This document shows positions 7,146-47,292 of a DNA stretch of 49,487 nt, piece after piece. This stretch comes from Octopus bimaculoides. Lineage: Eukaryota. Numbering within the stretch: the first letter of the stretch is position 1; each line of letters opens with the position of its first letter. The notes under the pieces were generated by a model, which worked only from the letters and a program-made list of their open reading frames with translations, was not told the DNA's origin and searched no databases. The stretch lies in contig NC_068998.1 in assembly GCF_001194135.2 (NCBI RefSeq), forward strand, positions 17,640,290-17,689,776. The letters run 5' to 3'. The position numbers and the translations under genes were made by a program.

Positions 7146-7293
7146 ATGCATCGCTATTTGGCTATGGATATTCCTCAAACATTTTCATGTTTTCTTTTCT
7201 TCACATTATTGCCCTCAATTTCTGCACAGTTTCCAAGAGTATGTGCGGAAAATGCCACCACTCCTGATGGAATTTGTTGTCCAACAAGACCAG
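7146..7293 (+). CDS. Exon 1 of membrane-bound tyrosinase/TRP family gene (signal peptide and start of Cys-rich domain)
   Basis: Translates MHRYLAMDIPQTFSCFLFFTLLPSISA-QFPRVCAENATTPDGICCPTRP. A hydrophobic signal peptide is followed by the QFPRxC...CCP N-terminus typical of TYRP1/DCT. Donor CAG|GTAAAA at 7294, phase 1. The alternative start ATG at 7164 is equally plausible. Confidence 0.9.
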
Positions 7294-17900: not shown

Positions 17901-20618
17901 GTTTCGTAGAGGATTTTTCAAAGTACATTTGTTAATGACTTCTTAAAAGATTTGGTGAAAGTAGATTTGTTTAAAATAGGCTAGAGGTAATCTAACAGTG
18001 AGATAAGTTCACAATCTAGTTTTGATTCTTGGGGTGTGACCGTCATTGGAAAAGGTATGTACGCCACTCGGTGGGTTTCCTTCACCCAGTATCACTTTAA
18101 TATCACAGTAGTGATTGCTATAATTGACAGATAAGCTTCCAGCATCCTGGATCAGATTCGTGACTTGGCGTTTATTTCTGGTTGCAATAATTTAGCTTCA
18201 CTTATGTTGCTAATTGAAAACTATTTTTACAAAAGATAGAATCCGGGAACTGATTTGTCTGATAGATTCAATTATTTGGAGAACATTCTTTTATTGTGAC
18301 TCTTCTATATTGAAATACCTTTGAATAACTATTTTTGTTGCTGTCGTTCACAATCACGTAACTGCTTTGCTTTTTAATTATCTTTTCAAACAACATTCAA
18401 CTGTGTGGGATGTGATGGTTCACATGATGACAGGATAAAAGCTTAAAGCCATGTGAAGAATTTCAATTGAGAGCGGAGACAGAATGAATACACAATAGCT
18501 GTGAATATGAAAATGCTTGTTATCTGGTTTTTGTTTCGTGTCTGTTTTTTTTTTTCTTTTCTGTATAGGTTTACTTTTGTCCATAAGTGGAGGAACGGAA
18601 ATAGAGAGCAGTATCATTTGAGCTAAAAAAAAATTTTTTAATGAAGATAAATTGATAGTTTTTCATAGAAAAGTGTATTTTAAAACCTTTAAGGTTCAGA
18701 ACTACATTGTTATTCACAAATAGTTTCCTGCTTTGAATATATTTTGCCTCATTCCAATAGACAATACAATCGAGAGGACACTGACCCAGAATAACTTATT
18801 ACAGTACTTAACTTCGTATTATTAAGCTTCCAGGTACACTCCCACAAAGATCCTATCATTTAACTGTCATCGGATATTTTCCCCCTTTCAACATCCGTAG
18901 CATAGATAATATACTATAGTGGAAAATTGATTTCATACCATTGTTAAAAATATTGGCCCGGTATCTATGTAAGAAGGTAATATTTCAGACATCGTTACTG
19001 ACAGATCAACGATATTGTATTCCCTCACAAGTGATACATAGACAAGACACTAACTTTCATACTACTTAATCTAGCCCTCTCATCAACCAATATCTCAACG
19101 AGCATCGGGAATAGAAACGTGTCATTACTGCAAGAAACAGAAGCATTGTATATTTATGCGTCGTAACGACGCTGACAAAAGTAGCTTTGTTTCCTTCTCA
19201 GCAGAATTTATCAAAGAGTATTAGATTTGGGCAAGTTCAGGAATTATATCTCGTAAAGTAGAATTTGATTAGTTGGAGTCAGTGATCAGTCGTGGGTGAG
19301 GTTTACTAGTTGGCTGATCACTATGCATTGAAGTGCTAAGAGAGTGAAAAGAAAAGGAAAACCAAAAAAGGGACCAGTCTTAACGATAGCTGAGAGTGAC
19401 AAAGTTATCAACTCCTACGGAACATAATATTCTCTTAATTCATGAACCAAAAATCTGTCTAACTGTAAGTCCTTGAGTATGTCTCATTCCTCATTTATTA
19501 TGAAGTACTTTTTTTTCCTTATTTTCCCCTAATGAGTGGCTGATGGAGAATATAGACGCAAGCGTGGATATATGATTGAGAAGCTCGCTTTACAACCACA
19601 TAGTTCGGGTTCGGTCTCAATGCGCAGCACCGTGAGCACGTGTCTTCTACTATATCTACGGGGCAACCAATGCCCTGTGAGAGAACTTGGTAGATGGAAA
19701 CTGGTTAGAAACCTGTAGTGTGTGTGTGTGGGTGGGGTTACAATGAAGAACACAAAAATCTAGTCGAGATTTTAAATGCAAAAATATTTATTTTTATCGT
19801 CAACAAAATAAATGTTTTTTGTTGTTCATAGTATCTGTGTCATGAACGACAAACTGTATCGAGACTATGGACGACAAAGAAATGATGTTTACAACAAGAT
19901 TATTCGAAGGTCATATAAGATGTTGGATTAGATATGATAATAGTCGCCATCGTAAGTTTCTTGAAGTTAGCGGGTCTTAGGGTGTCGCTGCCGTACCATT
20001 GTGCTGATGTTGTGACATCACTCTGGTCTGCTGCTGGTTCACTGCTACTGCCTGGTGTCTCTTTCTGCCGTCTGCTGTGTAGTGGCTAAAATGCACTGAA
20101 TATGTATATATATATATATATATATNNNNNNNNNNNNNNNNNNNNNNNNNNNNNNNNNNNNNNNNNNNNNNNNNNNNNNNNNNNNNNNNNNNNNNNNNNN
20201 NNNNNNNNNNNNNNNNNNNNNNNNNNNNNNNNNNNNNNNNNNNNNNNNNNNNNNNNNNNNNNNNNNNNNNNNNNNNNNNNNNNNNNNNNNNNNNNNNNNN
20301 NNNNNNNNNNNNNNNNNNNNNNNNNNNNNNNNNNNNNNNNNNNNNNNNNNNNNNNNNNNNNNNNNNNNNNNNNNNNNNNNNNNNNCCAACATCGTTTGAC
20401 AATTGCTGTTGATTTGTTTACGTACTCGTAGTTTAGTAGTTCGGCAAAAAAAGATAGAATACCAACTAAACTTTAAAGAAATAAGTACGATTTGCACGAC
20501 TAAAACCCTTCAAAACGGTGCCCCTATATACCCGCAGCCCAATGAGTGAAAGAAGTAAAAAACAAATAAAACAGCTTAATGATAGTCAAGAACGTTATTC
20601 AACAATCAAATATGAACA

Positions 20619-20699: not shown

Positions 20700-21075
20700 T
20701 TTGGTAGCAAGGTTGTGAAGGAAAGTATCTTCTTTTAACCATCATCTTTTAAATCATAAAGTCTTACAGGTTTTTACAGTCCTAGATATCGAGATCATTT
20801 GTAGCATATGAATTAAGGATTTGCATTCTCTTCCAAATATCTCAAGGTCAGCCATACTTTGCGCCAGACAGGTTGGTATGTATCCTGTTGTTCCAATATT
20901 GATAGGTTTGGAAGAGTATCTTGGATACTGGATTTGCAAAGTCCTTATCAAATGTCTATAGATGTCCCCTTTCTCTTGTATTTTTCTCACCACATTCGTA
21001 TTCAGAGGACAGCTGATTTCCACAACAGGACATATCCTTTCTTTCTGGTCCCACACAACGATATCTGACCGGTTG
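20700..21075 (-). mobile_element. R4/Dong-like RLE domain fragment (3' end of ORF)
   Basis: ICPVVEISCPLNTNVVRKIQEKGDIYRHLIRTLQ...PINIGTTGYIP matches the E...K..Y...P..IG..G pattern at the end of RLE ORFs. Confidence 0.75.
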
Positions 21076-21367
21076 TGTTTTAACTTGGTGGTCGTTCTCG
21101 TTTGTAGGTATTTTCTTTTTTGTTATCGTGTTCCAGATCGCTCTGCCTCTAAAGTATACTAAACGTTTTTTATAAGCAGTGCTTCTTACATTATTTTGTT
21201 AAGGTTGTTTCAACAGATATTCCATAGAAATTATAGCCAGCGCTGACTTTTGCTACAACGTTTCGTTTCGAGACGTCCATATTTCAGGAGTTGCTGCCCT
21301 TCCATTAGCACCCATCTAACCCATTCTCGCCTCTGAACACATTGCTTATATAGCCACCACATAGAGC

Positions 21368-23909: not shown

Positions 23910-24871
23910 GTGATACACTTCCATGTGGCGGTCCATTACGGGGATTGTGCCGGCCAATAGATTTTACCAACGAGGTTGATCTGGTCCCACCTGAAAACAA
24001 GATGGACGATCGTTTTAACTGGCCCACACGTTTCTTTAAACAAGCATGTGACTGTCGTGGTAACTATGATGGTTTTATGTGTCAGCACTGTGATTATGGA
24101 TTTACAGGACTTAATTGCACCAAAAAACTTCGTCGCATTCGCAAAGATTACAGGAAATTAACTAAAGAAGAGAAAGACGAGCTTCTTCGTGGTATTTTAC
24201 TGCTGAGTGAGACAGACAGTGATTATGCAGTTTTGGATACTACTGCTTCAGTGGATCCTGCAGTGAACCCAACATTTGTAAATGTATCGGTGTACAATTA
24301 TTTAGCTTATTTCCATTACTATGTGGCTAGGAGGACACTTGTGAAGCCTATAGAAAAGTGTCAAACGGCAGCCTTCGTGCCCGATTTTGCTCACGGAGGA
24401 CCGGTGTTCAGTTCGTGGCACCGAGCATATCTCTTACTTTGGGAAATGGAAATAGCAAGAGCCCTGAAAAATCCATCGTTTTCTTTCCCCTATTGGAACT
24501 GGACTGAATCAGGTAGAAATTGTGATGTGTGTACCAACGATTTTATGGGTCATACACCTGATAACAAAAACGGAACACTTGATACTTTGTCTTTGTTTTC
24601 GGAGTTCTCCGTATATTGCGTACCGACTCTGGGCGGCTGTGCAGGCTGCAACGTGTCAACACCGAGTGGGAAGATTATTCGACGCCCAGGCAACAACCCT
24701 GAATATCGCTCACTTCCTCCTTTGAGGGATGTAGAGTTCTTGAAGGCCGTTAAAAACTATGACACTTTACCGTACGACACACGCAGTGGTAATAACAGCT
24801 TCAGAAACCTTTTGGAAGGGTTTGCGAATAGAGAAGGACCAACCACCGGTAGAATGTACACTCATAATCAG
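23910..24871 (+). CDS. Exon 2 of tyrosinase/TRP family gene (EGF-like Cys-rich region, metal site A, first His of site B)
   Basis: Acceptor TTTCAG|G at 23909; phase 1 matches exon 1 (G-GT-GAT...). Encodes CDCRGNYDGFMCQHCDYGFTGLNC, FHYYVAR, DFAHGGPVFSSWHR, PYWNW..CDVC, SFRNLLEGFA and THNQ. Donor CAG|GTTGGT, phase 0. Confidence 0.95.
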
Positions 24872-25199
24872 GTTGGTAAGATTTTATTTGATATTATTGA
24901 GAATGTCAACATCTTGTACCACATCCAAATACTAGGTCTCTTCCAGGTGTCACCCCCTCCACCACCACCACCACCACCACCACCACCACCGTGCAGCTTT
25001 TCCAAGCTTTGATGAAAGCTTCGGCGTCGATTCCATAACTTTTACTGTTGATACTGGTACAGGCTTCTTGCCTGATTATACTTGGCCATGTTGTATTTTT
25101 GATTATAATCTTTCCTTTCATTCTGGATCTTAGACCAAAATTATTTAACGTCTTCCTGAGAAAAGGTTCTTTTTACTTAAATATTCTACGTGTGTCTAC

Positions 25200-26075
25200 G
25201 TGTGTATGCCGTTGTTCAATTTTATTTCAAGATTTATTGCCAATAGAGAAAGAGCCGGTTTTTAACCTAGATCTAAGGCTCCTTCTTTAGAATTTCAATG
25301 TGAACAACGGGGTATTTTTGTTTCTATGTATGTGTATGTGCAGATTTGTATGTTTTGTTTTATGTCTGTATTCTCATGCATATAGTTGTATGCCTAGACA
25401 TGCTCATATATATTTAAATGATAAACGTCTGGAAAGTTTTACAGATTTTTACAGTTCCAGTGATGGACTGGATCTGTAGTCTTCGAATCAGCTTTCTCCT
25501 TTCTGGTTTTGAGAAGCCTAGTTTCTCAAGATTGGTATTTAGTCAGTGTGTCACATATCCCAGTGCCCATTAATTACAGGTATAAATCTGAACTTGTAAT
25601 CTGGACAGAGTAATTGCAGATTTCTCAATAGTCCAGCGTAGATATTCTCTTTATCACTGATCTTCAGTTTTATGTTAACATCCGCTGGGCAGCTAATTTC
25701 TACAACTGTACATAGTTTCTCTTTTCGATTTCTAAATCATTATATCAGGTCTGTTGTGCTTACATTTTATTGAGGTTTTCACTAGGACATTCCACTTCTT
25801 TTTTATTACGAGTGGCTATGGCTTCTACCATACTGTGGGTTCTCATTTCTTTGTCCTCGGGGTTATCCTTCCGACGGATTTCATTATAGAGTATCCTAGC
25901 TACAACATCATGTCTCATCAGTATATAATACCATGATGACATTTTCGGATAACTACTTATGGCGTGGGTAATATCTTCGGTGTTAACTCCACAAACTCTG
26001 CATCGGTTGTCACATTTTGTTGCTTTTCCTGAATCTCTATCCCTTTTGCACATCAGGTATTTGGTTGATATTTCT
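25200..26075 (-). mobile_element. R4/Dong-like retrotransposon 3' fragment (CCHC knuckle, RLE domain, probable 3' UTR)
   Basis: CRVCGVNTEDITHAISSYPKMSSWYYILMRHDVVARILY, then TVVEISCPADVNIKLKISDKENIY..LLRNLQ. The UTR-like region runs left to AAATAAAATTGAAC. Confidence 0.75.
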
Positions 26076-26989
26076 TGTTCCATATGTATGTATGTATGTA
26101 TGTATGTATGTGTGTATGTATGTATGTATCATCTGTTTTTAACCATTTAAACTCTTCCTCTAAAGAAGGAGCTGATTTCTAACAACGATACAAAGCTCCA
26201 TCTTTGGAATGTAGTTAACGAAAACACAGTCACATTTTAAACCTGACAAACATCTTGTATAGTATCACTGTTCTGCTCACATATTGTATATGTAATGTGC
26301 AAATTAGTCGATTGATTTCTTTTCATGAAAACTCAAGCTTATCCAGACTGACTGTAAGGCATTTACTTACAAAACCAAATGCACCTATTATTATTTGTAT
26401 AAATGTAAATTAGTAATCCAGATATAGAAGATGGAGGTTTGAAAGCAGTTGTTCATAGTTATCTTCTTTCTCTTTGATTTTCAAAGAGATATTCACATCA
26501 GCAGGACAGTTGACCCCTATGATGGCACATACTTTTTCTTGTCTGTCCCAAACAAGAATATACAGCCTGTTATGCTTACTCGTAACGTATGTTTTATTGG
26601 GAATGTTTCGTGTACTGATATTTGTGTACTATTCAATAACAGAGGGATTCTCTATGTTTATTCCACGACAGTCTTTTTTCTGAATGGCATTGTATGTATG
26701 TATGCATGTGTGTGTATACGTATGCATGTATGTATGCTTGCCTGTTACATGAATATATGTCTGCATAAACATGCATATGCACGGAGATCACTGCATGTGT
26801 GGATCTGAATGTTTTGAGATATATGGGTACACATGTGCATGCATGTCTACACGTTTATATGTATACTTATTATATGCTGCAATTCAAAAATCTTTTACAA
26901 ATGTTTTTACAGTGGCGTATCAAGAGTGTGCTACCCAAAGTCAGCCATTAAGTTCGCTGGCCCTTTCCCACTCTCCAGCCCCTATTCAA

Positions 26990-27440
26990 GCTGTAAAGTT
27001 GACCCAAAAGTGCCACCAGAGATAGAACGTCCCTCTCGGTTGCCCCTTGCTCCGCTGCTAGTTTTTGATGGTTTGTAGTTGTAATTTCCTGATTTGCCAC
27101 GTTCTTTCGTGAAGCCCAGCTTCTCGAGACCGATGCTGTGACATTTACTTACGTATCCAAGTGTCCCAATAATTATAACTATAATCCCAAAGCTGGATTT
27201 CAATTGAGGAAACTGCAGATTCTTCATTACTTCTTTCTTACTATTCTTTAACTTTTTATTAACAACTGCAAAGAAACTGATTTTCACTGCTATACATAAA
27301 GTCTAGCCGCTATTCCATCCAGTATTCCAACTCATTATGCCTGATCTGTTAATCGCTTACATTTTACAGAGGTCTTAATGGAAACAATTCGCCAGTCTTG
27401 TTTCATTTTATGAGTGACAATGCTCGCCATATCACTTCAG
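26990..27440 (-). mobile_element. RLE retrotransposon C-terminal fragment
   Basis: IIVIIIGTLGYVSK.....LEKLGF resembles the P+IIG.LG motif seen in the other RLE copies. Confidence 0.5.
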
Positions 27441-27889
27441 CTTCTTTTAATTGTATCTTCTAACGCGGCGAGCTAACAGAACCGATGGCGCATCAGACAA
27501 ATATGTTTCGCAGAATTTCTTCTTATTCATTACGTTCTGTGTTCAAATTCCACCGAATTTTCATTGGACTTAATTGCATTTTTCAATTTTTTTAAAGGAG
27601 AGATTGCCTTTCCAGGCATGACTAGCATAATACATGATGGATCCAAAGTATTGTTTGTGCAATACGTTGTTTCATTTTGCTAGTAAACGTGGTGCCTATG
27701 GTTTCTTTATGCTTGTGCATGCACTTCACTTCTTTAACTGTCATTTATGTGTGCTGTGTTGTGGAATTGGTGTTTATAGCTCCAAACAGTTTTGTCATCT
27801 GTTTGAACTATATGCAATTTACTGCAATGGTTGTCCAATATGTTTTCGGGTATGGCTCATAAGAAGAAGAGACACAATGAATTTGTAAG

Positions 27890-28450
27890 GTGCGACTTTA
27901 AGTATCTTATTTTTCAGCCATGTTTTTAATCGGATCTAGGCAAGCACTTAGTTTTGCAACTTGTCAAGAGAATAATTGGGGAGTGTAATGTCATCTACGT
28001 ACAAGATTGTATGTATGCTTCGATAAAGTATCAGTGTCAAGTAGGTATAGGATGATAAAAGCGGGGATGAGGTTCGGATACTTGTAGCATGTCTTTCGCG
28101 AAATTGAAAGTTTCAGAAATGGGTTTGTCTTAGCGGCCTTGAATATAGTTCATTAACCGGTGTTTTCTACTTTTTTGGTAGATGTCACGTATTTGTGCAT
28201 TAGTGGATAGTGAGGATTTGGTGTAGTAAGCTTTGGAAGTTAAAATGATGCGTGAGAGAGGTGATTTGTTGTTGAAGCTATCGTTGTGTCGTCTGTTTTA
28301 GGCTTGTGAGTAGCACGGTTATTGAGTGCAGTGATCTAAATTCACGTTGTGAGTGGGGTTAGTAATGTCAGGTGGTGATACTTCCTACGATTTCGAGGGT
28401 GAGCGTAAGAGTTAAACATCCGCGAATTATATCACTCTATTTTCATTTTT
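27890..28450 (-). mobile_element. Highly decayed non-LTR reverse transcriptase fragment
   Basis: The reverse strand encodes TILYVDDITL (YVDD at 27990-28001), preceded by a frameshifted G.QGS..SP.F.LY-like segment. Confidence 0.5.
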
Positions 28451-28892
28451 TGTTAGGTTTCTAGATTTAAAAAATATTTTATTCAAGACTTAGAACGAGT
28501 ACTTGTAAACATTCATAATTGCAGTTTTAAGTTTATGTTTGTAATTTTTCCCTGAGACTTCTCAGTTTTTTAGATTTCCCTATGGCTTGTTGGTATTTGA
28601 CGAAAGAAAGAGAGAAAAGAAAGAACAATGATCTAAGTGTGTAATTTTCGTTTTGTGTTACTTCTTGACAAGACTTTTGATGGCTGATTTTTGAGATATG
28701 TCTGATGGAGGACATTGTTTTTTTTTGTTTTTTTTTATTGTGTACGGTTGTGTTAAGTTCTTATTGTGACGTGAAATATGATGCAGTTGTTGTTCTTCTT
28801 CCTCTTGATGATAATGACGATGATGACTATGACGACGACAAGGATGACGGCGACGACAATGACGATGACATGACAATGACATGACGACAGTA

Positions 28893-28925
<33 letters not shown>

Positions 28926-29499
28926 CCTATCCTACATAATGTTTTACTGTTTGCTCTGTGGATTACATAGTTTTTATTTTTTTATTCATTTTGTTTTTGT
29001 TATGTCATTGTTTAGATATTTGATATTCAGTTTTATGTCTATTGCTTTTTTACCTTGTCCATAATTTTAACAAGATTGGCTATTTCCGTCGAATAACTAG
29101 GGATACATTTCTTTCTCCTTTTTTTGTTCTTTTTTTTTTCACATTGTCGGATATGTCATTTGGAAGCGACACATATAAAAATGTTTCGTTGAAAATATGT
29201 ATTGCGGGATTTATGTTGGCAGTTATGGTGTTGCTGAATTCTATAATACAAGCCTTGATTCTGTTTCCCGATGAAAGTGGCTCCACATAGAGTATCACAG
29301 ATATCTTTAATTACCGCTACAATACGTCAGCCTACAGGCTAATTCAGTCAGCCCTACTTGCCTCTCCTGCTCACACTTAAGCAAATTTACTAGAGGTTAA
29401 ACACCATCTTGATACACGCTCCTCTTTCTAAGTGAATTTCAAGTGGAACTTGATGTCAATGGAGGTTTGGCTGAAGAGGAATCATACAATGGAAATATA

Positions 29500-29963
29500 C
29501 AGTGGGGGGAAACAAATATTCGTACAGGTCAAAATTCTTTATTTATTTAATTTCTAATGAACATAAACGGGATATATCAATACTATATTTGCATACACAT
29601 GCATAAACTAAGAATATGCAAAAGAAACTAATAAATTATAGTAACTAATGAATTTATATACAATTATAAATATTTAGGGGTGAAAAAAAGTATTTGTACA
29701 GAACATAAATATCTGATAATTCTGATTTAATACTTCGTAGCATAACCATTATTCAGTTCCACTTCAACCAATCTCTTCTTGTAGTTCTTAATCAATGACT
29801 CGCATGTTTCTTTAGGAATTTTTTCCCATTCTTCTTGACAAATTTTCTTCAAATCTGGAATGCACATTGGGGCTCTCGCCGTGTGCTTAGAGTCGTTATC
29901 CTGTTGTAAAACCCACCCTTCACAAAGCTGGAGCTTTTTTACAGAGTCCCATAACTTATTGTT
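29500..29963 (-). mobile_element. Tc1 (DD34E-type) transposon 3' end with internal deletion; remainder lost in the N gap
   Basis: WVLQQDNDSKHTA...DLKKICQEEWEKIPKETCESLIKNYKKRLVEV...GYATKY*. The terminus TA|CAGTGGGGGGAAACAAATATTCGTACAG is at 29500, with an inner repeat AAAAAGTATTTGTACAG near 29685. Confidence 0.85.
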
Positions 29964-30479
29964 NNNNNNNNNNNNNNNNNNNNNNNNNNNNNNNNNNNNN
30001 NNNNNNNNNNNNNNNNNNNNNNNNNNNNNNNNNNNNNNNNNNNNNNNNNNNNNNNNNNNNNNNNNNNNNNNNNNNNNNNNNNNNNNNNNNNNNNNNNNNN
30101 NNNNNNNNNNNNNNNNNNNNNNNNNNNNNNNNNNNNNNNNNNNNNNNNNNNNNNNNNNNNNNNNNNNNNNNNNNNNNNNNNNNNNNNNNNNNNNNNNNNN
30201 NNNNNNNNNNNNNNNNNNNNNNNNNNNNNNNNNNNNNNNNNNNNNNNNNNNNNNNNNNNNNNNNNNNNNNNNNNNNNNNNNNNNNNNNNNNNNNNNNNNN
30301 NNNNNNNNNNNNNNNNNNNNNNNNNNNNNNNNNNNNNNNNNNNNNNNNNNNNNNNNNNNNNNNNNNNNNNNNNNNNNNNNNNNNNNNNNNNNNNNNNNNN
30401 NNNNNNNNNNNNNNNNNNNNNNNNNNNNNNNNNNNNNNNNNNNNNNNNNNNNNNNNNNNNNNNNNNNNNNNNNNNNNAT

Positions 30480-30660
30480 ATATATATATATATATATACG
30501 ACGGACTTCTTTCAGTTTCCGTCTAACAAATGCACTCAAAAGGCTTTGGTTATTCCGAACCTTTTGTAGAAGACACTTGCTCCCAAGGTGCCAAGCAGTG
30601 GGACTGAATCCGGAACCATGTGGTTGGGAAGAAAACTTCTTACAACACAGGCACGCCTGT
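30480..30660 (-). mobile_element. SINE family B, 5' module
   Basis: Reverse of the head ...AACCACATGGTTCCGGATTCAGTCCCACTGCTTGGCACCTTGGGAGCAAGTGTCTTCTAC...GACGGAAACTGAAAGAAG. Homologues at 19565-19715, 41250-41360, 42800-42910, 43430-43580 (-) and 45090-45225. Confidence 0.8.
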
Positions 30661-30979
30661 TGATTTTAACATCATATAGTACAGTAGAACTACAGACATT
30701 GTTGTAGTTAACAAGAAGCATTGTTGTGTTAAAACACTGGTATGATGATACTTACGAGGGGGAAACAGAAAATAATGCAATTGTTGTTTGCATTACTTTT
30801 TCACTTATTTTCGTATATATGTAGATAGTATAAAGAATAATCGAATTAACATTAAGGAAGATGAATACTTGGAAAGTATCAGGATCTCAAAATATGAAAT
30901 CTCATTTGCGCTGATCTCAACCGTCTCGGGAACCCTCGTGGGCCCGCGAAGGCAATAAGCTCAGCTCCTTCCTCTAGAC

Positions 30980-31276
30980 CAGGGGTTTTCAAACTTTTTG
31001 ACTTGCGGACCCCTTTATATTTCAGGCTTTACCTTAGGGACCCCCTTATAAACGCTTATGAAATTTATACATAAATATTTGCTTAAAATAACATATATTT
31101 TTACATTTATTTATTTAACAGTATTTAACAAATAGGTTCATTGTCAATTAAAAGATTTCGATTAAAAAACATATATAAAATCAAATTGCCCATAAAAAGT
31201 ATTTGCTGTCGACAGACCCCCGGTCTTGTCCTTGCGGACCCCCTGTGGTCCGCGGACCACAGTTTGAAAACCCCTG
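30980..31276. mobile_element. Intact non-autonomous hAT (Charlie-type) MITE, 297 bp
   Basis: Perfect 16-bp TIRs CAGGGGTTTTCAAACT / AGTTTGAAAACCCCTG. Perfect 8-bp TSD CTCTAGAC at 30972-30979 and 31277-31284. Subterminal GCGGACC repeats. Confidence 0.95.
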
Positions 31277-31364
31277 CTCTAGACTACAACCAAAGAAAAC
31301 ACAGTCTTACTATATTTAGAAATTGTCTGACGGCGACTCCGCAAAATCATCAACGAATTGAATA

Positions 31365-31545
31365 AAATGCTTAGCGGTATTTCTTCCTGCTCCTTACGTT
31401 CTGAGTTCAAATTCCGTCGTGGTCAACTTGGCCTTTCATCTTTCTCGGGGTGGATAAAATAAATTACTAGTCAAGTACTGGGGTAGATGTAATTAACTTG
31501 CCTCCTCCCATTATAATTTCTGAGCCTGTGCCAAAATTAGAAAGA
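31365..31545 (+). mobile_element. SINE family A, 5'-truncated
   Basis: AAAATGCTTAGCGGTATTTC...CGTTCTGAGTTCAAATTCC...GTGCCAAAATTAGAAAG. Confidence 0.85.
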
Positions 31546-31639
31546 ATATTCAGAAATTTTCTCTAAAAAGTCAGGCAAATAACTAACTAGGAGGGAGATA
31601 TTAAAATTCATTACAGAATATCTTCGAACAAAAAAAAGA

Positions 31640-31965
31640 CTGTTACATAGGAATAGGTCATGAATGACCATGGGATTGCACCTAGAAAGTTACCCTCCGA
31701 GGTACAAGTCCGGACAAGGTTGTTTATGGAAGACCAGCAGTCGCCCATGCATACCAACCTCCTCTCTCCACGCCACCGATGTTATCTAAGGGAAAGGCAA
31801 AGACCAGTACAGTTTGATATTAGTGGCGTCGCAACTCATTTCTACAGGTGAGTGAACTGGAGCAACGTGAAATAAATTCTCTTCCTCAAGAACACAACAC
31901 ACAGCCCGGTCCGAGAATCGAACTCCCTACCTAATGATTGTGAATCCAACGCTCTGACCACTGAG
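31640..31965 (-). mobile_element. tRNA-derived SINE family C (middle module X plus tail T2)
   Basis: Reverse head ATGGCTCAGTGGTCAGAGCG...GGGAGTTCGATTCTCGG (A and B boxes), then TTTATTTCACGTTGCTCCAGTTCAC, then a distinct 3' tail. Confidence 0.75.
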
Positions 31966-32211
31966 CCATAATAAGGATCAAAGAAAGTATAACACAGTAT
32001 AGAAGTAAGCACTAAAATGACATTAGTTTTAGAAATCAAGATCTCTGGTACAACTCCATTTCCGGGAGCGACCACTTCCGTTCATAATATCCTAAAACTA
32101 AGTGAGGAAATAAGAGAAGTTTTGTTGTATGGTGATGCTGAAGCTGCTGATAATGATGATGATAATGTAATAATGATAATGAGTAGCCCTCTCTTTCTTT
32201 CTTTCTTCCTT

Positions 32212-32259
<48 letters not shown>

Positions 32260-32599
32260 TATCTCTGTCAATCGTAGTATCAAATGTAACTAATTGTTTT
32301 TTTGCTGTTGTTTTTGTTCTAAGAGATGTATTGGATATCTTGCGGGATTGTTATCAGGAGTGTTCCTTTTCCGCACTTCGCACTTCTGGTGTGTTTGTTT
32401 CCTAAGATTTGCAAGTGACGAAGAACGGCCTTCCTAAAATCACTAAGGAAGGGAAATATCGTTTAAACTTGTAGCTTCTTGTAGAAAATCCACAAGTGAT
32501 AAATATTCAGTTTTATTTATTAAGTACTTGCGACAAACTGTATTGAAAAGAATTAATTGAATAAAATACGTTCCACTTCATCATATGATAATGATAATG

Positions 32600-32655
<56 letters not shown>

Positions 32656-32745
32656 GATGATGATGATGATGGTGATGATGATTTCTTTATTAACCACAAG
32701 GGTTTACATTAAGAAAAACATTATGGACAACACAGGACAAAACAA

Positions 32746-33540
32746 TAATAAACTGCCAAACGGGAAAGCAGCAGGACCAGACAAAATTCAAAGCTAGAGG
32801 CTCAAGCGGTTTAGGTCAACACACAAGCCAATTGCGTTGCAATTAGACAATTGCCTACAGAGTAATGCAGTTCCGGAATGGATTGTAAAGGGAAAGACAA
32901 CATTATTGATGAAAAATTGGTCAAAGGGCAATGAAGTTGACAATTACCGACCCATTACTTGTCTTAACCTCTTCTGGAAAATGTTAACTGGCATGCTCAC
33001 AGGGAAAATATATACGTCCCTTGTGGGAGACAATCTTCTTCCAGTTGAACAAAATGGATGCCGAAAACAATCGAAGGGCACCAAGGACCACCTTGCCACT
33101 AAGCATTTTGTCTGATGCACTACACATACATGCATGCATGCATGCATACATACATACATACATACATACATACATACATACATACATACATACATACATA
33201 CATACATACATACATTGGAGTTGTATTAGAGATTAAAGCCAGAATAACAAAAGAGTAGACTCCGGAAAATATGGAACTCATAGATGTCTACATTTAACGA
33301 GACCATATCTCACAGTGTTCTTGCAGTACTAGTGCTAGTACCAACATTTGGGATATTGGATTAGACATTCGATGAGACACGCAGTCTGGTTATCAAAATC
33401 AAAAAGGTACTGACCACCACTGGTAAGTTCCATATTAACAATGACACTAATAGGGTTTATGTGAGAGGAATTGATGGCAGTAGAATCATAAGGTTAGTCC
33501 AAACAGCCTTTGAACGTCGCATTGTATCACTCAGACAACA
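32746..33540 (+). mobile_element. R4/Dong-like RT fragments split by a (TACA)n tract
   Basis: KLPNGKAAGPDKIQ, then VPEWIVKGKTTLLMKNWSKGNEVDNYRPITCLNLFWKMLTG...EQNGCRKQSKGTKDHL. Further decayed ORF sequence lies at 33230-33540. Confidence 0.85.
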
Positions 33541-33574
33541 CATGCTGAACAGTAAAGAAAGAAATTAGTATATA

Positions 33575-33750
33575 GCGGCGAGCTAGCAGAATCGTTAGCA
33601 AGCCGGACAAAAAGCTTCAATTCCCGCCAAGGTTGAATTTGACTTTCGTCCTTTTGAAGTCGATAAAATAAGTTCCAGTTGAAAACTGGGGTCGATGTGA
33701 CTGATTTACCCCTCCCTAAAATTGCTGGCCCTGTGCCAAAATTTGAAGCC
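33575..33750 (+). mobile_element. SINE family A
   Basis: GCGGCGAGCTAGCAGAATCGTTAGC...GGGGTCGATGTG...GGCCCTGTGCCAAAATTTGAAGCC. Confidence 0.85.
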
Positions 33751-35604
33751 AATATATAATGTATTGTAAAATTTACTATATTTATGTACATGTGGGAAGT
33801 GTTGTACTAAATCTAGAAAATTCTAACTATGTTCGTGGTAACGTCCAAGTTATGTGGTAGATAATAGTATTTTGTCTTCTGTTGTATGTCAGTAATTCAT
33901 GCCAAGAAAGTAGTTATTTTGATTTGTACTTTAGTTTTAAGCTAGATAATCTGAGATTATAAAGCTTAAGCAATTTTTATATAGGATAACACATGCAAAC
34001 TGTTTTTAATTAATTAATTTGAGATACTAAATTTGAAACTAATCGAGGAAGAAATATTGATTTGTTAAGTGGGTGGGAACTTAATGTTTAAAATATTAAA
34101 AAATGTTGAAGTTGGATCAGATATGCTGTGAAATAAAAATATTTTTTCGTATCTAATATTAATTTTTTTCCCTTTTCTTTCGGCAAATAAGGGAGACAAC
34201 ACCAGGCATGTTCACGCTCATTAGAGTTTGTCACCGTAAGCCTAACCTTACTGTAACATTTATTTTATTGTACAGCATACAGGCTTAAATATTTACAATT
34301 AAACATATATTCTGGAGCCAAAAGGAAGGAAAATATTTGAAATCCAAATAATTCTGAGACGCCATCAACATGACAGATAATATTTAATCGGAATATTAAA
34401 ATGCTAAAGTACAATCAAATATGTGACTAAATCAAACTATATTTATAGGAAACAAATAATTATGTTTTCCTCGGCAGTTCTGGATATGTTTGATTTATAA
34501 TGCAGTTCCTAAACAGTAATATTTAGTCTCGCAGTAACTTGTAGCTTTAACGAATTGTTAAAGTCTGGTAGTTAAGCTAGCTCTTTTTGTGAGTTCAGAT
34601 GATTTCTGGTCATTTTACCATTCAGCAAAAAAGACATTTTGATTTGTTGCATACAGCTGCTACTTTGCACTTTAACTAATGACCAATGTTTCTTTCTCAA
34701 CTTGGATTTCATTGATTAATGCGCTTAGACGGTATTCCTCGTTCACTGGGAATTCCAGACTTGATGCTCAATCAAATTCTCCACATAACAGGAATTGAAG
34801 AGACCCTCATATAATAACTCGGTAAAATTTAAATAGGTTGGTCAGTTAGAGTAAAGATAAGTCGTTGGTTCAGGAAAAAGCTTTTTACAAATGTCTGTTC
34901 GCGTACTTATTTGCTATTTTAGTTGCTATCTTACTTGCTATTTTAACGATGTTTTCCATTAATTTTTCGACCTCACCGCGAACAAACGCTTACAAGGAGA
35001 AAAGTCAAAGATGTAGATTGATTACAACTGATGAGGTTCTACAATTTTAGAAGATTCTAATGAATATCAAAGCTAAATTTAATCAAACGTCTTCACATGA
35101 TGACTTGAAGTCAGTTGAAGATAAAAATTTCAATAGTGACGTGTCTGAAATGAGGGTAATAGTTCTCAATCAACTGATGATAGCGGTGATGTAATGATAC
35201 TAAACTGGCTGATTGTCAATTCTAGTTATCTCCAACTTTCAGGCCTATCAGTTTTCGATCAATCTCTTTTTGAGAGCCGTATCTATCTCTGATGTTCTGA
35301 TGAAAGTTATCTCCTCACCATCAGGACTCACCGGGTAAACTTCTTTGAAAAAAGGTAACTTTCACCAAAAGATTTCATAACTTAAATATTTTATTACATT
35401 GCGATGGAACCGTAAGTACATCGACTAATTCTCAACAGGTAAACGTAGTGGTCGAATTACTTTATGGATGTTTCAATTCGACAGTATTGTATACACATCA
35501 GAGGTTAACTTATGATGACTAACTATTCCTGTCTGTTATTCATCCGTCTTGTGCAGCTTTTCATTAGAACTTTTAGTCGTTTTTGGTGCCATCCGCTTAG
35601 ATAT

Positions 35605-35648
<44 letters not shown>

Positions 35649-35773
35649 TTCCGTCTTCCTCTTTCCTTCTCCAACTTCCTTTATTGTTGCCAAGTCGTAT
35701 GATCAAAAATGTCAGTATTCTTTATTAAACCAGATTTATTCGCATTGTAGGACTACCAGAATTTGAAATACTT

Positions 35774-35835
<62 letters not shown>

Positions 35836-37288
35836 CAAATAGTTTTCTAAATATTTACTGAATGTCTGTTTCACAGTAATAATAGACAAGTGAATGATTT
35901 AACAGTCTAAAGTTGTTTTCATGCAGTTAATGAAGTTTCTTTTGAAGTTACATTTTTTATTTATTTATCTATTTTAGTAGTGGGGGTGTTTTTAAGAACT
36001 ATAAATTCCCACATTTTATTTATCTTATCTCTATCTTGCTCTTTTGGTCTTCTTTGGCGAGCTAGCAAAAGTATTTAAATGTCGTTTCTTGTTCCAGTTC
36101 TTAATGTAAATTAATTTTAGTTCTCTTTGAAGCTTGCTTTCATCCATGAATTCGCGGCTTGCTCCGGTTTTCTTTACAGTATATGTTCAGTCTAAAACTT
36201 TCGCTTCTATTATTTATCCTGTCTAAAACGGACTACATATTTCAAGTTATTGATGTTTTTTTTCCTCTTGCATTCATGACGTTTTGTCTTGTATTTTCTT
36301 TGAACATAAATTTAATCTATGGTAAATTGCTGTGTATGGTATGTTAGTATACATCATAAATTATGTATGGTTAGTTGACTACTTCACAGATTAATTCTTC
36401 CATTATTAAAAGACAGCTCTCACTTCTCAAGTTTTTCTTCGTTATTAAAAAGTAGCTTATAATAAAAGACTATAAATCTAATCGTTGTAGTGGCACACTA
36501 ACAACATTTAATGTGGCTAAGTGCGTGCGTGTTTTCGTTTAAACGTGTGTTTGGTTTATCTCATTCTTTTCTAAAATAATCTTATCTGATAACAGTTTCG
36601 CCGATAACTAAAAATATTTCTTTTGTTAATAATTTAGTTTGCTTTTTATTATAAGTTTTTAATTCGCGTGTTATGATAGATTTTTTAGTTTCAGATTCAA
36701 CAAAATTTCTAGATCATGGTTTCGATTTTTTCTCGATGATGAATCAATGTCTTACATCAATACAAAGTGTAACAAAATATTCACAAGAAAGATATTTCTT
36801 TTATTCAAAACGTTCTACGAATTAGAAATAACAGTGGAAAATGCTTTGTTAAAATTTTTCAGTTAACAGCATGGGTGGTGTCTATTCTTTTTGAAAATAT
36901 GGGGCCCTGTTTTCTCTAATGAGTATGTACAGACTTTTAAAAGTGCCTAAACTGAGCAAGTATCCAGAAGTCCTTACTTGATAGGGCTACCATATAACGA
37001 GCAATTCGAAAGTGTACTTTCGATATTTAAACAAAGGTCTCAGACAGTCATTTTCGTATGAGCTCTGACGCATTGTAGTCACGCTCTGGATATTCAACCC
37101 AGGATATTATGAATAAAGAAATTGAAAAATTAAAGAGATCAGCACATTTTCAAAAGCAACGAACAGCACTCTGGAACAAAATGTTCCGCTTTGTGTTATT
37201 TTTAATTTGTTTCACGAGTAAAGTTTTTTGTTTCATTTTGTCTGTTTATAATTTAGTAACTAACATTTTGAAACATCTCTTTTCTCAG

Positions 37289-37423
37289 GTCCATGCTTTC
37301 ATGAATGGAACATTTTCTGAATTGGTTACAGCTGCATTCGACCCTGTTTTCCAGCTTCATCATGCATTCGTAGATAAAACTCTGGAAATTTGGATCAGAG
37401 AAAACCAACCAGCTTACTCAGAG
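37289..37423 (+). CDS. Exon 3 of tyrosinase/TRP family gene (metal site B)
   Basis: Acceptor TTTTCTCAG|GTC. Encodes VHAFMNGTFSELVTAAFDPVFQLHHAFVDKTLEIWIRENQPAYSE, continuing HNQ|VH in frame. Donor GAG|GTAAGT, phase 0. Confidence 0.95.
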
Positions 37424-37547
37424 GTAAGTGTAATATGTTAAAATTATAAGAGAGTTGCAGAAATATTGTTTCGATTCCTAGCTGAAATATTATTTTCTCG
37501 AAGCAAAGATAGAAACACATTTAAATTTTTCTCTACTTCAAAAAAAA

Positions 37548-37750
<203 letters not shown>

Positions 37751-40718: not shown

Positions 40719-40863
40719 CTGCCAGTATTTGAAGCCCCGCCGGGTCACGGTAGAATGGCCAACATGGTGCCGTTCTTTCCAGTAGAAAAGAACTTCATGA
40801 TGTTTGCTCACTCACACGCTCTTGGCTACGACTATGACGATTTGGTTGTAGAAGATGTACCGA
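40719..40863 (+). CDS. Exon 4 of tyrosinase/TRP family gene
   Basis: Too short for the ORF track; translated by hand. Acceptor TTTTTGACAG|CTG. Encodes LPVFEAPPGHGRMANMVPFFPVEKNFMMFAHSHALGYDYDDLVVEDVP, matching the family motif AP.GH.R..NMVPF.P...LGY.Y. Donor A|GTAAGT, phase 1. Confidence 0.92.
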
Positions 40864-43704: not shown

Positions 43705-44148
43705 TAGTTGTTGGCACTCCGTCGCTTACGACATCGAAGGTNNNNNNNNNNNNNNNNNNNNNNNNNNNNNNNNNNNNNNNNNNNNNNNNNAAGGTTCCAG
43801 TTGATCCGATCAACGGAACAGCCTGCTCGTGAAATTAACGTGCAAGTGGCTGAGCACTCCACAGACACGTGTACCCTTAACGTAGTTCTCGGGGATATTC
43901 AGCATGACACAGAGTGTGACAAGGCTGACCCTTTGAATTACAGGCACAACAGAAACAAGAAGTAAGAGTGAGAGAAAGTTGTGGTGAAAGAGTACAGCAG
44001 GGTTCGCCACCATCCCCTGCCGGAGCCTCGTGAAGCTTTAGGTGTTTTCGCTCAATAAACACTCACAACGCCCGGTCTGGGAATCGAAACCGCGATCCTA
44101 TAACCACAAGTCAACTGCCCTAACCACTGGGCCATTGCGCCTCCACTG
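43705..44148 (-). mobile_element. tRNA-derived SINE family D, second copy (contains a 49-N gap)
   Basis: Near-identical to 42315-42700 along its length. Confidence 0.85.
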
Positions 44149-45289: not shown

Positions 45290-45494
45290 TGAGTATATNN
45301 NNNNNNNNTGATTAGCGGTATTTCGTCTGCCCTACGTTCTGAGTTCAAATTCCGCCGAGGTCGACTTTGCCTTTCATCCTTTCGGAAACGATTAAATAAA
45401 TACCCGTTACGCACTGGGGTCGATATAATCGACTTAATCCGTTTGTCTGTCCTTGTTTGTCTCCTCTGTGTGTAGCCCCTTGTGGGCAGTAAAG

Positions 45495-47056: not shown

Positions 47057-47292
47057 AAACTTCGCTCAGTCCAGTTTGGATTATTGTTATTGTCGAAGCT
47101 GGTCTTTTACTGCTTCTGCTGGCAATCATCATCGAATTGGCACGCACACGTAATCACCGTTCCCAAGCAAGACAACTGAGTTCCACGTCCGTGCATAACA
47201 ACGTCACCGCTGACACAGCTGATGAAGAACAACCAATATTCCAACCAGGAAACCCAACTTACAGAACCTATAATGCTGCCGAGAATTCATAG
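47057..47292 (+). CDS. Exon 5 (terminal) of tyrosinase/TRP family gene: TM helix and cytoplasmic tail
   Basis: Long poly-T tract then TTGCAG|AA; phase 1 fits exon 4. Encodes KTSLSPVWIIVIVEAGLLLLLLAIIIELARTRNHRSQARQLSSTSVHNNVTADTADEEQPIFQPGNPTYRTYNAAENS, ending at TAG 47290-47292. The 541-aa total matches vertebrate family members. Confidence 0.88.

What the first reader, a model, noticed from the sequence alone, without database searches (positions are those of the whole stretch)
24314..37423. Active site mixes TYR-specific and DCT-specific residues
All six His are present (24314, 24392, 24419; HNQ|VH; LHH), and site B spacing is 4 and 23, as in TYR. TYR-like features: LHHAFVD (TRPs have LH[TS]FTD), DFAH, HYYV, LLxWE, EGFA and MNGT. 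DCT-like features: Met three residues before the first site B His, Val before the second His, and Ala at the TYR S380 position. TRP-like features: QFPR, HxGP and NMVPF. AAFDP replaces the ANDP/PNDP of all three vertebrate paralogues and resembles hemocyanin AA[FY]DP. Activity and metal (Cu vs Zn) cannot be predicted. A dopachrome-rearranging activity has been described biochemically in cuttlefish ink, so this is a candidate for that activity or for a bifunctional ancestral-type enzyme. Vertebrate residues are recalled from memory.
Basis: partly seen in the sequence, partly recalled or inferred. Interest (0 to 1): 0.7.

Follow-up and report, generated by a model that had tools for sequence, protein, structure and literature searches.

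The report
Octopus tyrosinase gene, ancestral-type active site
This is the already annotated membrane-bound tyrosinase gene of Octopus bimaculoides; its mix of "TYR-like" and "DCT-like" residues is what a gene that split off before the vertebrate TYR/TYRP1/DCT duplications should show, so the finding is largely ordinary.

Summary
They belong to a clean five-exon, 541-aa gene (7146-47292, + strand) that is 100% identical to the NCBI protein "tyrosinase [Octopus bimaculoides]".

The N gap (29964-30477) lies inside the 12.4-kb phase-0 intron that splits HNQ|VH. A gap-free Argonauta hians locus has identical exon lengths and the same junction, so no exon is missing.

Most of the paralogue labels do not hold:
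- Val before the second CuB His occurs in 38 of 41 invertebrate homologues. Amphioxus has the identical HNQVH.
- Ala at the TYR S380 position occurs in 21 of 41.
- HxGP and QFPR are general to the family.
- Met at -3 is found in only 2 of 6 DCTs.

The octopus protein has none of the TYRP1/DCT signature changes tested (L for H394, L227, F247, S210, T398). In an NJ tree it lies outside the TYRP1+DCT clade (100% bootstrap).

The mosaic therefore reflects retained ancestral states in a pre-duplication co-orthologue, most likely a copper tyrosinase. Rosani et al. 2019 already discussed this gene as "octopus DCT".

The one distinctive feature is N to F/Y in the NDP motif. It is confined to the four cephalopod proteins among 228 family members and resembles mollusc hemocyanin.

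The parts
7146..7293 (+). Exon 1: start codon, signal peptide (7146-7226), QFPR (7227-7238) and the first Cys of the Cys-rich N-terminus. Ends in phase 1 with donor GT.
   Evidence: NCBI protein P0001 starts at the upstream ATG 7146. In Argonauta only that Met is conserved.
23910..24871 (+). Exon 2 (962 nt): EGF-like Cys-rich region (24047-24118), CuA site (His codons at 24314, 24392, 24419), NWT sequon (24497-24505), LEGFA with E352 (24815-24826), and first CuB His plus Asn (HNQ, 24863-24871).
   Evidence: Pfam PF00264 covers residues 170-401 of the 535-aa model, E=1.2e-35.
24872..37288 (+). Intron 2 (phase 0, GT...AG, about 12.4 kb), splitting H-N-Q | V-H. It holds the assembly gap and repeat/retroelement debris.
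   Evidence: The same junction occurs in Argonauta hians with a 1183-bp gap-free intron.
29964..30477 (.). Assembly gap (514 N), intronic. It does not interrupt coding sequence.
   Evidence: N runs. The orthologues P0003 and P0004 are continuous across the junction.
37289..37423 (+). Exon 3 (135 nt): second CuB His (37292-37294), MNGT glycosylation sequon, L382 (aligned with the TYR Val of MSQVQGS), A385, F387 (37337-37339, cephalopod-specific N to F), Q392, and H394-H395 (37358-37363) in LHHAFVD.
40719..40863 (+). Exon 4 (145 nt): PPGHGRMANMVPFF (NMVPF at 40761-40775) and GYDYDD, the end of the luminal domain.
47057..47292 (+). Exon 5 (236 nt): transmembrane helix (47074-47142); cytosolic tail with DEEQPIF (47221-47241), aligned to the vertebrate E-x-QPLL motif; conserved NPTY.TYNAAE end; stop TAG at 47290-47292.
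   Evidence: The AF2 model has a helix at 469-500.

Best explanation
The window carries the Octopus bimaculoides gene for a membrane-anchored, gamma-class type-3 copper protein. Its layout is signal peptide, EGF-like Cys-rich region, tyrosinase domain, one transmembrane helix and a short cytosolic sorting tail.

It descends from the single gene that later gave rise, within chordates, to TYR, TYRP1 and DCT. Each vertebrate paralogue kept a different subset of ancestral residues. An outgroup sequence such as this one therefore necessarily looks like a mixture of 'TYR-specific' and 'DCT/TRP-specific' states. The mosaic is retained ancestry, not a sign of special chemistry.

Inferred mechanism (not shown here): a glycosylated luminal enzyme binds two copper ions through H185/H211/H220 and H368/H372/H395. 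The conserved E352/N369 pair activates substrate. The enzyme oxidises tyrosine or DOPA-type phenols inside a lysosome-related pigment granule, to which the acidic DEEQPIF tail directs it. Published expression data place it almost exclusively in the retina.

A few coleoid-specific changes, above all N387 to F/Y in the NDP motif ahead of the third CuB His, may tune the site. They do not move it towards DCT.
For: Shown here:
- The five-exon GT-AG model translates to a protein 100% identical to NCBI 'tyrosinase [Octopus bimaculoides]'.
- Pfam Tyrosinase E=1.2e-35.
- Best solved relative is human TYRP1, E=1e-75 over residues 22-449.
- AF2 model has pLDDT 83.7 and matches TYRP1 5m8l with TM 0.85.
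- All six His, E352 and N369 are conserved.
- TRP signature changes are absent: the octopus has H394, W227, W247, A210 and V398 where TYRP1 and DCT have L, L, F, S and T.
- Diagnostic columns score 7 TYR / 2 TRP of 16, within the invertebrate range.
- NJ bootstrap: TYRP1+DCT 100%, DCT 100%, and vertebrate TYR+TRP+tunicates (plus unnamed relatives) 84%, all excluding cephalopods.
- phmmer bit scores to TYR (295), DCT (284) and TYRP1 (257) are roughly equal.
- Purifying selection versus Argonauta: dN 0.116, dN/dS about 0.04 with dS saturated.
- The tail motif aligns with vertebrate E-x-QPLL.

From the literature:
- The gamma subclass is defined as membrane-bound and occurs in sponges, flatworms, annelids and deuterostomes (PMC3658974).
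- Trematode relatives act as tyrosinases in eggshell hardening (PMC5450960).
- Expression is retina-restricted (PMC6678240).
Against: - No enzyme assay or metal analysis exists for any cephalopod gamma-type protein. Metal choice in this family cannot be read from sequence (PMC5855855).
- Cephalopods share three rare states with TYRP1/DCT: N179, N246 and N430 of NMVPF (3, 2 and 4 of 41 invertebrates).
- They carry non-conservative changes at positions where human TYR mutations cause OCA1A: N382 (here F), S380 (here A) and W272 (here F).
- Deep branches of my tree are weak (16-45%). It is NJ, not ML, with only 2 TYRP1 and 6 DCT sequences in it.
- To my knowledge (not checked here), cephalopod eye screening pigment is usually described as ommochrome, so the physiological substrate in the retina is unclear.
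Confidence: 0.75

Rival explanations
1. The protein is a functional dopachrome tautomerase or dopachrome-rearranging enzyme (a Zn enzyme like vertebrate DCT). 2019 labelled the gene.
For: - Rosani et al. list it as 'O. bimaculoides DCT'.
- A dopachrome-rearranging activity exists in Sepia ink.
- It shares N179, N246 and N430, which are rare in invertebrates, plus A385, V371 and (in 2 of 6 DCTs) Met at -3 with DCT.
- The first homologue search listed DCTs as the top vertebrate hits.
Against: - Rosani's label rests on the Pfam domain plus BLAST with human DCT. It does not discriminate DCT from TYR or TYRP1.
- V371 and A385 are ancestral states.
- The protein has none of the five TRP signature substitutions tested (L394, L227, F247, S210, T398).
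- It lies outside the 100%-supported TRP clade.
- N246 creates an N-W-T glycosylation sequon in all four cephalopods, a simpler reason for that change.
- The Sepia enzyme yields mainly DHI. DCT yields DHICA, and the DHI-forming yellow/DCE family is also present in cephalopods.
- The gene is reported as retina-restricted, not from ink gland. The tissue panel was not checked and may lack ink sac.
Confidence: 0.08
2. The protein is a coleoid-specific neofunctionalised oxidase. The aromatic F/Y at the NDP Asn, together with Q392, L382 and F282, reshapes the CuB side of the pocket in a hemocyanin-like way. The result would be altered substrate range (for example catechol oxidase only, or a non-melanin substrate in ommochrome granules of retina or chromatophores) or altered O2 handling.
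For: - F/Y387 occurs only in the 4 cephalopod proteins among 228 motif-bearing family members. All others have N (209) or small S/T/G/C.
- Mollusc hemocyanin units have [AS][FY]DP at the same place.
- Q392 replaces a hydrophobic residue found in all others.
- Human N382K, S380P and W272R/C are OCA1A mutations.
- These changes are conserved between octopods and the roughly 68%-identical orthologues, under strong purifying selection.
- A 'tyrosinase' is co-expressed with TDO in squid chromatophore cells, though which gene it is was not stated.
Against: - The six His, E352, N369 and most second-shell residues are canonical.
- The exon-3 peptide is still closest to gamma-type tyrosinases (51-63% identity, ungapped) rather than hemocyanin (44%, gapped), so there is no gene conversion.
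- I could not inspect the model coordinates, so no structural role for residue 387 was established.
Confidence: 0.15
3. The feature is an artefact: a mis-joined or broken gene, with an exon lost in the assembly gap or a pseudogene.
For: There is a 514-N gap inside the gene span, and eight other N runs in the window.
Against: - All splice sites are canonical and the ORF is intact.
- Exon lengths are identical in the gap-free Argonauta locus.
- The orthologues P0003 and P0004 are continuous across the junction.
- dN/dS is about 0.04.
Confidence: 0.02

Closest known systems
Vertebrate tyrosinase (TYR, EC 1.14.18.1)
   Same: Same domain order (signal peptide, EGF-like Cys-rich region, tyrosinase domain, TM, acidic P-L-L-type tail). 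Six His with identical spacing. Shares LHHAFVD, DFAH, LLLWE, EGFA and MNGT, and W247, H394 and the E352/N369 pair. About 35-38% identity.
   Different: It is not inside the vertebrate+tunicate clade (84% NJ support). It has V371 (TYR L), A385 (TYR S380), L382 (TYR V), F387 (TYR N382), F282 (TYR W272), N246 and N179 (TYR D), HxGP (TYR HEAP) and NMVPF (TYR YMVPF). From memory, the intron positions appear not to match those of human TYR; this was not tested.
Vertebrate DCT / TYRP2 (EC 5.3.3.12, Zn enzyme)
   Same: Same family and architecture. Shares V371, A385-A386, G213-P214, N246, N430 and (in some DCTs) Met at -3. About 34-36% identity.
   Different: Lacks the TRP signature changes: VLH[SA]FTD (here LHHAFVD), LLxLE (here LLLWE), YWNF (here YWNW), DFSH (here DFAH), HYYSV, LNGT and EGFD. 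It lies outside the DCT and TRP clades, each with 100% support.
Human TYRP1 crystal structure (5M8L / 9EY5), binuclear Zn as crystallised
   Same: Best solved relative: E=1e-75 over residues 22-449 of the 535-aa model, 33% identity, TM 0.85. No alignment shifts occur around the active site.
   Different: TYRP1 has R374, Y362 and T391, where the octopus has M365, F354 and L382. TYRP1 also has LLHTFTD and SPNDP.
Invertebrate gamma-class 'tyrosinase-like' proteins (amphioxus, hemichordates, tunicates, the nemertean Tubulanus, trematode eggshell tyrosinases)
   Same: Same architecture and the same 'mosaic'. Examples: amphioxus HNQVH; hemichordate DFAH-AGP and LHH; flatworm LHHAFVD with HNLVH; nemertean M at -3. 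The nemertean protein is the best non-cephalopod hit (41%, 357 bits).
   Different: None has an aromatic residue at the NDP Asn, Q at 392 or F at 282.
Mollusc hemocyanin functional units (alpha-class type-3 copper proteins)
   Same: The local CuB motif S-x-L-x-x-[AS]-[AS]-[FY]-D-P-x-F-x-L-H-H resembles FSELVTAAFDPVFQLHH.
   Different: Hemocyanin has a 4-residue insertion after the second His, different overall architecture and much lower similarity (about 20 bits per unit versus 72 bits to TYRP1 for the same segment). The exon-3 peptide is 44% identical with a gap to hemocyanin versus 51-63% ungapped to gamma-type proteins. The resemblance is a point convergence.

Membership tests
Type-3 copper protein / tyrosinase domain (Pfam PF00264) | Significant match to the tyrosinase central domain | tested here: met
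   124.3 bits against a cutoff of 22.6, E=1.2e-35, residues 170-401 of the 535-aa model.
Type-3 copper protein / tyrosinase domain (Pfam PF00264) | Six metal-binding His arranged as CuA H1(n)H2(8)H3 and CuB H1(3)H2(n)H3 | tested here: met
   H185, H211 and H220 (8 residues between H2 and H3); H368, H372 and H395. Motif definition is from PMC3658974.
Gamma subclass (membrane-bound tyrosinases; Aguilera et al. 2013) | N-terminal signal peptide, Cys-rich/EGF-like region and C-terminal transmembrane helix | tested here: met
   The hydrophobic N-terminus ends ...PSISA|QFPR. Family-conserved Cys are at 33, 44, 45, 55, 63, 96, 98, 107, 110 and 119. VWIIVIVEAGLLLLLLAIIIELA lies within AF2 helix 469-500. 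No dedicated SignalP or TMHMM run was available.
Gamma subclass (membrane-bound tyrosinases; Aguilera et al. 2013) | Aliphatic 'place-holder' residue over the active site (Val in listed gamma members) | tested here: met
   L382 aligns with the TYR Val (20/20 TYR, 23/41 invertebrates V; 3/41 L). It is aliphatic but not Val.
Catalytically competent tyrosinase (monophenolase) | Conserved Glu and Asn (the residue after the first CuB His) that position the activating water. This role was established for bacterial tyrosinase; the statement rests on my own knowledge. | tested here: met
   E352 is invariant (41/41 invertebrates, 29/29 vertebrates). N369 is present. All three vertebrate paralogues also have both, so the pair does not discriminate TYR from DCT.
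Catalytically competent tyrosinase (monophenolase) | Copper loading and tyrosine hydroxylase / DOPA oxidase activity | not testable with these tools
   Needs protein expression, ICP-MS and assays. Metal choice is not predictable from sequence (PMC5855855).
Vertebrate DCT/TYRP2 orthogroup | Phylogenetic placement inside the DCT (or TYRP1+DCT) clade | tested here: not met
   The DCT clade and the TYRP1+DCT clade each have 100% NJ bootstrap and exclude the cephalopods.
Vertebrate DCT/TYRP2 orthogroup | TRP signature substitutions (Leu for the His before HB3; LLxLE; YWNF; DFSH; F-T-D) | tested here: not met
   The octopus has H394, W227, W247, A210 and V398, so 0 of 5. It does share N246.
Vertebrate DCT/TYRP2 orthogroup | Zn site and L-dopachrome to DHICA tautomerase activity | not testable with these tools
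   Biochemical. Residues that confer DCT specificity are unknown.
Vertebrate/tunicate TYR orthogroup | Placement inside the TYR clade | tested here: not met
   Cephalopods lie outside the 84%-supported clade holding vertebrate TYR, TRPs and tunicate TYR. They group weakly (45%) with nemertean and flatworm sequences, as a co-orthologue of all three paralogues.
Sepia ink dopachrome-rearranging enzyme | Identity with the purified ink protein | not testable with these tools
   No sequence of that enzyme was available, and the original paper is not held. The reviews describe a mainly DHI-forming, melanosome-associated activity.
Mollusc hemocyanin / alpha subclass | Overall similarity and CuB-region architecture of hemocyanin functional units | tested here: not met
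   Only the [FY]DP motif is shared. There is a 4-residue indel and lower scores than to gamma-type proteins.

The most novel reading that the evidence does not exclude
Coleoid cephalopods have reshaped the CuB side of their single melanosomal-type tyrosinase: an aromatic F/Y replaces the otherwise near-invariant Asn of the NDP motif, together with Q392, L382, F282 and TRP-like N246/N430. The enzyme could therefore have a different activity from canonical tyrosinase. One possibility is the DHI-forming dopachrome-rearranging activity of ink. Another is a role in ommochrome-type granules of retina or chromatophores.
Probability: 0.12. Interest if true: 0.6.

Novelty: already known. Interest (0 to 1): 0.22.

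Why it matters
If the ordinary reading holds, the value is mainly corrective in two ways. First, the gene has been called both 'tyrosinase' (NCBI) and 'DCT' (Rosani et al. 2019); the residue and tree evidence here says it is neither a TYR nor a DCT orthologue but a pre-duplication co-orthologue. The published inference that cephalopods 'retained DCT' should therefore be read as 'retained a gamma-class tyrosinase'. Second, residues often quoted as DCT- or TRP-specific (Val before HB2, Ala at S380, HxGP) are ancestral. It is TYR that changed, which matters when these positions are used to reason about Cu versus Zn or tautomerase specificity.

The cephalopod-specific N to F/Y change sits at a position where human N382K causes albinism. 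It is a cheap mutagenesis target for asking what that Asn does. A retina-expressed melanosomal-type tyrosinase, in an eye whose screening pigment is, to my knowledge, usually described as ommochrome, is also a small open question.

Tried and rejected
- I looked for an independent assembly of the octopus locus to read through the gap. The only record found (GCA_001194135.2, CM046618.1) is the same sequence with the same N run. I used the gap-free Argonauta hians locus instead.
- I considered that the hemocyanin-like AAFDP might come from gene conversion with a hemocyanin gene. This is rejected: the exon-3 peptide is closer to gamma-type tyrosinases, ungapped.
- I considered a missing micro-exon in the gap. 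This is rejected by the restored HxxxH motif, the phase-0 junction, and the orthologous proteins and genomic locus.
- I tried to read Palumbo et al. 1994 on the Sepia dopachrome-rearranging enzyme. It is not held, so only the reviews were used.
- The word-indexed homologue searches returned few distant relatives (23 and 21 hits). TYRP1 remained thinly sampled: one PDB sequence plus two unnamed representatives, of which one (partial) was left out of the tree.
- A Pfam scan of ten intronic and flanking ORFs gave only one weak reverse-transcriptase hit.
- The coordinates of the AF2 model are not exposed, so contacts of residue 387 could not be examined.
- Literature searches for a cephalopod knockout or an in situ study of this specific gene found none.

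Full report
**What is there**

On the + strand the window holds a five-exon gene. All splice sites are GT-AG.

| Exon | Coordinates |
|---|---|
| 1 | 7146-7293 |
| 2 | 23910-24871 |
| 3 | 37289-37423 |
| 4 | 40719-40863 |
| 5 | 47057-47292 (stop TAG) |

These coordinates rest. The translation is 100% identical to a database protein named 'tyrosinase [Octopus bimaculoides]' (541 aa), which uses the upstream in-frame ATG at 7146. That Met, not the one at 7164, is the one conserved in Argonauta. Pfam finds one tyrosinase domain (E=1.2e-35).

The protein has these parts:
- a signal-peptide-like N-terminus ending ...SISA|QFPR;
- an EGF-like Cys-rich region;
- the CuA and CuB sites;
- a hydrophobic helix, VWIIVIVEAGLLLLLLAIIIELA;
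- a 49-residue cytosolic tail.

**The assembly gap**

The N run 29964-30477 lies inside intron 2 (24872-37288). Exon 2 ends ...ACT CAT AAT CAG|GT and exon 3 begins AG|GTC CAT GCT. The intron is therefore phase 0, and the junction rebuilds the H-x-x-x-H of CuB.

The only other record of this locus is the same assembly with the same gap, so I used a relative. The Argonauta hians orthologue (82% identical) sits on a locus without any N. Its exons are 148/962/135/145/236 nt, identical to the octopus exons. Its junction is CATAATCAG|GT...AG|GT and its intron 2 is 1183 bp. Two further orthologues of about 68% identity, found on short contigs (2-4 kb) of read-archive assemblies, read THNQVHAYM straight through. 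No exon is missing; only the true intron length is unknown.

**Check of the observation**

The alignment to human TYRP1 and a 74-sequence L-INS-i alignment do not shift any of them. The CuB spacing of 4 and 23 is correct, but it is shared by TYR, TYRP1 and DCT.

The hemocyanin comparison is also correct. Mollusc hemocyanin units read ...S-x-L-x-[YT]-[AS]-[AS]-[FY]-D-P-x-F-x-L-H-H at the same place.

**Are the residues paralogue-specific?**

I compared the following sequences:
- 20 vertebrate TYR;
- 3 TYRP1 (the human PDB sequence plus two representatives);
- 6 DCT;
- 41 invertebrate homologues: amphioxus, tunicates, hemichordates, a nemertean, trematodes and 23 unnamed representatives;
- 4 cephalopod sequences.

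Results:

| Feature | Distribution | Reading |
|---|---|---|
| Val before the second CuB His | 38/41 invertebrates; amphioxus has the identical HNQVH | TYR (Leu) and TYRP1 (Ala) are the derived ones |
| Ala at the TYR S380 position | 21/41 invertebrates | Common, not DCT-specific |
| Gly of HxGP | 34/41 invertebrates | Ancestral |
| QFPR | 18/20 vertebrate TYR | Not TRP-specific |
| Met three residues before HB1 | only 2/6 DCTs | Not diagnostic of DCT |
| 'TYR-like' H394 (LHH), W247, A210 (DFAH) | 40/41, 39/41, 32/41 invertebrates | Ancestral; TYRP1 and DCT jointly changed them to L, F and S |

Most of the mixture therefore consists of retained ancestral states.

Of 16 columns that separate TYR from both TRPs, the octopus has the TYR state at 7 and the TRP state at 2. 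Other invertebrates range 4-9 and 1-6, apart from three tunicate-clade sequences (two named tunicates and unnamed P0174) at 12-13.

**Placement**

I built an NJ tree on 457 trimmed columns with 100 bootstraps. Support values are:
- TYRP1+DCT, 100%;
- DCT, 100%;
- vertebrate TYR, 72%;
- the clade of vertebrate TYR + TRPs + tunicates (plus unnamed relatives), 84%.

The four cephalopod sequences (100%) lie outside all of these. They group loosely (45%) with nemertean and flatworm sequences. The best non-cephalopod hit overall is a nemertean 'tyrosinase-like' protein (41%, 357 bits).

Bit scores to TYR, DCT and TYRP1 are similar (295, 284 and 257). The gene is thus a co-orthologue of all three vertebrate paralogues. 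Limits: the tree is NJ rather than ML, deep nodes are weak, TYRP1 is thinly sampled, and 23 sequences have no taxon name.

**What was already known**

Aguilera et al. 2013 defined the membrane-bound gamma subclass. Their table lists it in sponges, flatworms, annelids and deuterostomes but not in molluscs.

Rosani et al. 2019 already reported a cephalopod 'DCT'. They drew the O. bimaculoides protein with signal peptide, EGF, tyrosinase domain and TM, and found it expressed almost only in the retina. Their identification rested on the Pfam domain plus BLAST with human DCT. My residue and tree tests do not support the DCT label.

The same paper shows that cephalopods also have a yellow/DCE gene. 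Yellow-type enzymes make DHI, which is what the Sepia ink activity mainly makes, whereas DCT makes DHICA.

Solano 2018 stresses that metal choice, and the residues giving DCT its specificity, are unknown. Cu versus Zn therefore cannot be settled here.

**Likely function**

Shown here:
- an intact gene under strong purifying selection (dN 0.116, dN/dS about 0.04 versus Argonauta, with dS saturated);
- all six ligands plus the E352/N369 pair;
- a confident model (pLDDT 83.7) that superposes on TYRP1 with TM 0.85;
- eight luminal N-x-S/T sequons, including the conserved N376-G-T;
- a tail motif DEEQPIF that aligns with the vertebrate E-x-Q-P-L-L. To my knowledge that vertebrate motif is the AP-3/AP-1 melanosome-sorting signal of TYR.

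Inferred: a copper-loaded phenol oxidase working in a lysosome-related pigment granule. Trematode members of the same class are described as tyrosinases acting in eggshell hardening.

**What is distinctive**

Five near-invariant columns are changed in all four cephalopod proteins: K149, D179N, D246N, W282F and N387F/Y. In addition, Q392 replaces a hydrophobic residue found in every other sequence.

- Among 228 family proteins carrying the CuB motif, the residue before D-P is N in 209, S/T/G/C in 15, and F or Y only in the four cephalopods.
- In human TYR, N382K, S380P, D383N and W272R/C are listed as OCA1A mutations.
- The exon-3 peptide is still closest to gamma-type tyrosinases (51-63% identity, ungapped) rather than to hemocyanin (44%, gapped). 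The hemocyanin likeness is convergence at a point, not gene conversion.
- D246N creates an N-W-T sequon.
- N179, N246 and N430 are shared with TYRP1/DCT and are rare in invertebrates (3, 2 and 4 of 41).

**Verdict**

The mosaic is what a pre-duplication orthologue should look like. The gene is annotated and has been discussed in print. The residual interest lies in the coleoid-specific aromatic replacement of the NDP Asn and in the unexplained retina-restricted expression.

Noticed in passing
window 37337-37339 (F387); also 37352-37354 (Q392): Cephalopod-only aromatic residue (F in octopods, Y in two other orthologues) replaces the Asn of the NDP motif. It occurs in 0 of 224 other family proteins. 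The neighbouring Q392 replaces a hydrophobic residue found in all other sequences, which may be a compensating pair.
   Followed up: partly
window 24497-24505: The D246N change, shared with TYRP1/DCT, creates an N-W-T glycosylation sequon in all four cephalopod proteins.
   Followed up: partly
window 47221-47289: The cytosolic tail DEEQPIF aligns with the vertebrate E-x-QPLL sorting motif. It is followed by a conserved [ND]P[ST]Y.TYNAAE C-terminus, an NPxY-like motif, in all cephalopod orthologues.
   Followed up: partly
L002 2001-16105 (Argonauta hians): The orthologous gene is compact (14 kb versus 40 kb) with identical exon lengths. The octopus introns are 3-10 times longer: intron 1 is 16.6 kb versus 7.7 kb, and intron 2 is 12.4 kb versus 1.2 kb.
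   Followed up: yes
window 37540-37750: A very long trinucleotide-type simple repeat starts about 120 nt after the exon 3 donor. It reads as poly-T, poly-Q or poly-N in the three frames. Many (CA)n/(TG)n and similar microsatellites occur throughout the introns.
   Followed up: no
window 16864-17205 (+); also 32798-33112 (+), 14081-14584 (-), 20757-21122 (-), 9891-10464: Stop-free stretches that look like transposon or retroelement remnants lie inside introns 1 and 2. Only 16864-17205 gave a weak RVT_1 hit (E=3.7e-4, below the gathering score).
   Followed up: partly
window 3796-3911, 5149-5596, 9214-9812, 16721-16730, 20126-20385, 43742-43790, 45299-45308, 48638-48647: Eight further N runs are in the window besides the flagged one. 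All lie outside the five exons.
   Followed up: yes
P0005 (ENA protein prediction, 352 aa): This truncated orthologue prediction matches up to the CuB His-Asn (...THN) at the exon 2 end and then diverges into unrelated sequence. The break is at the same place as octopus intron 2, which is consistent with that intron position being conserved in that species too.
   Followed up: no
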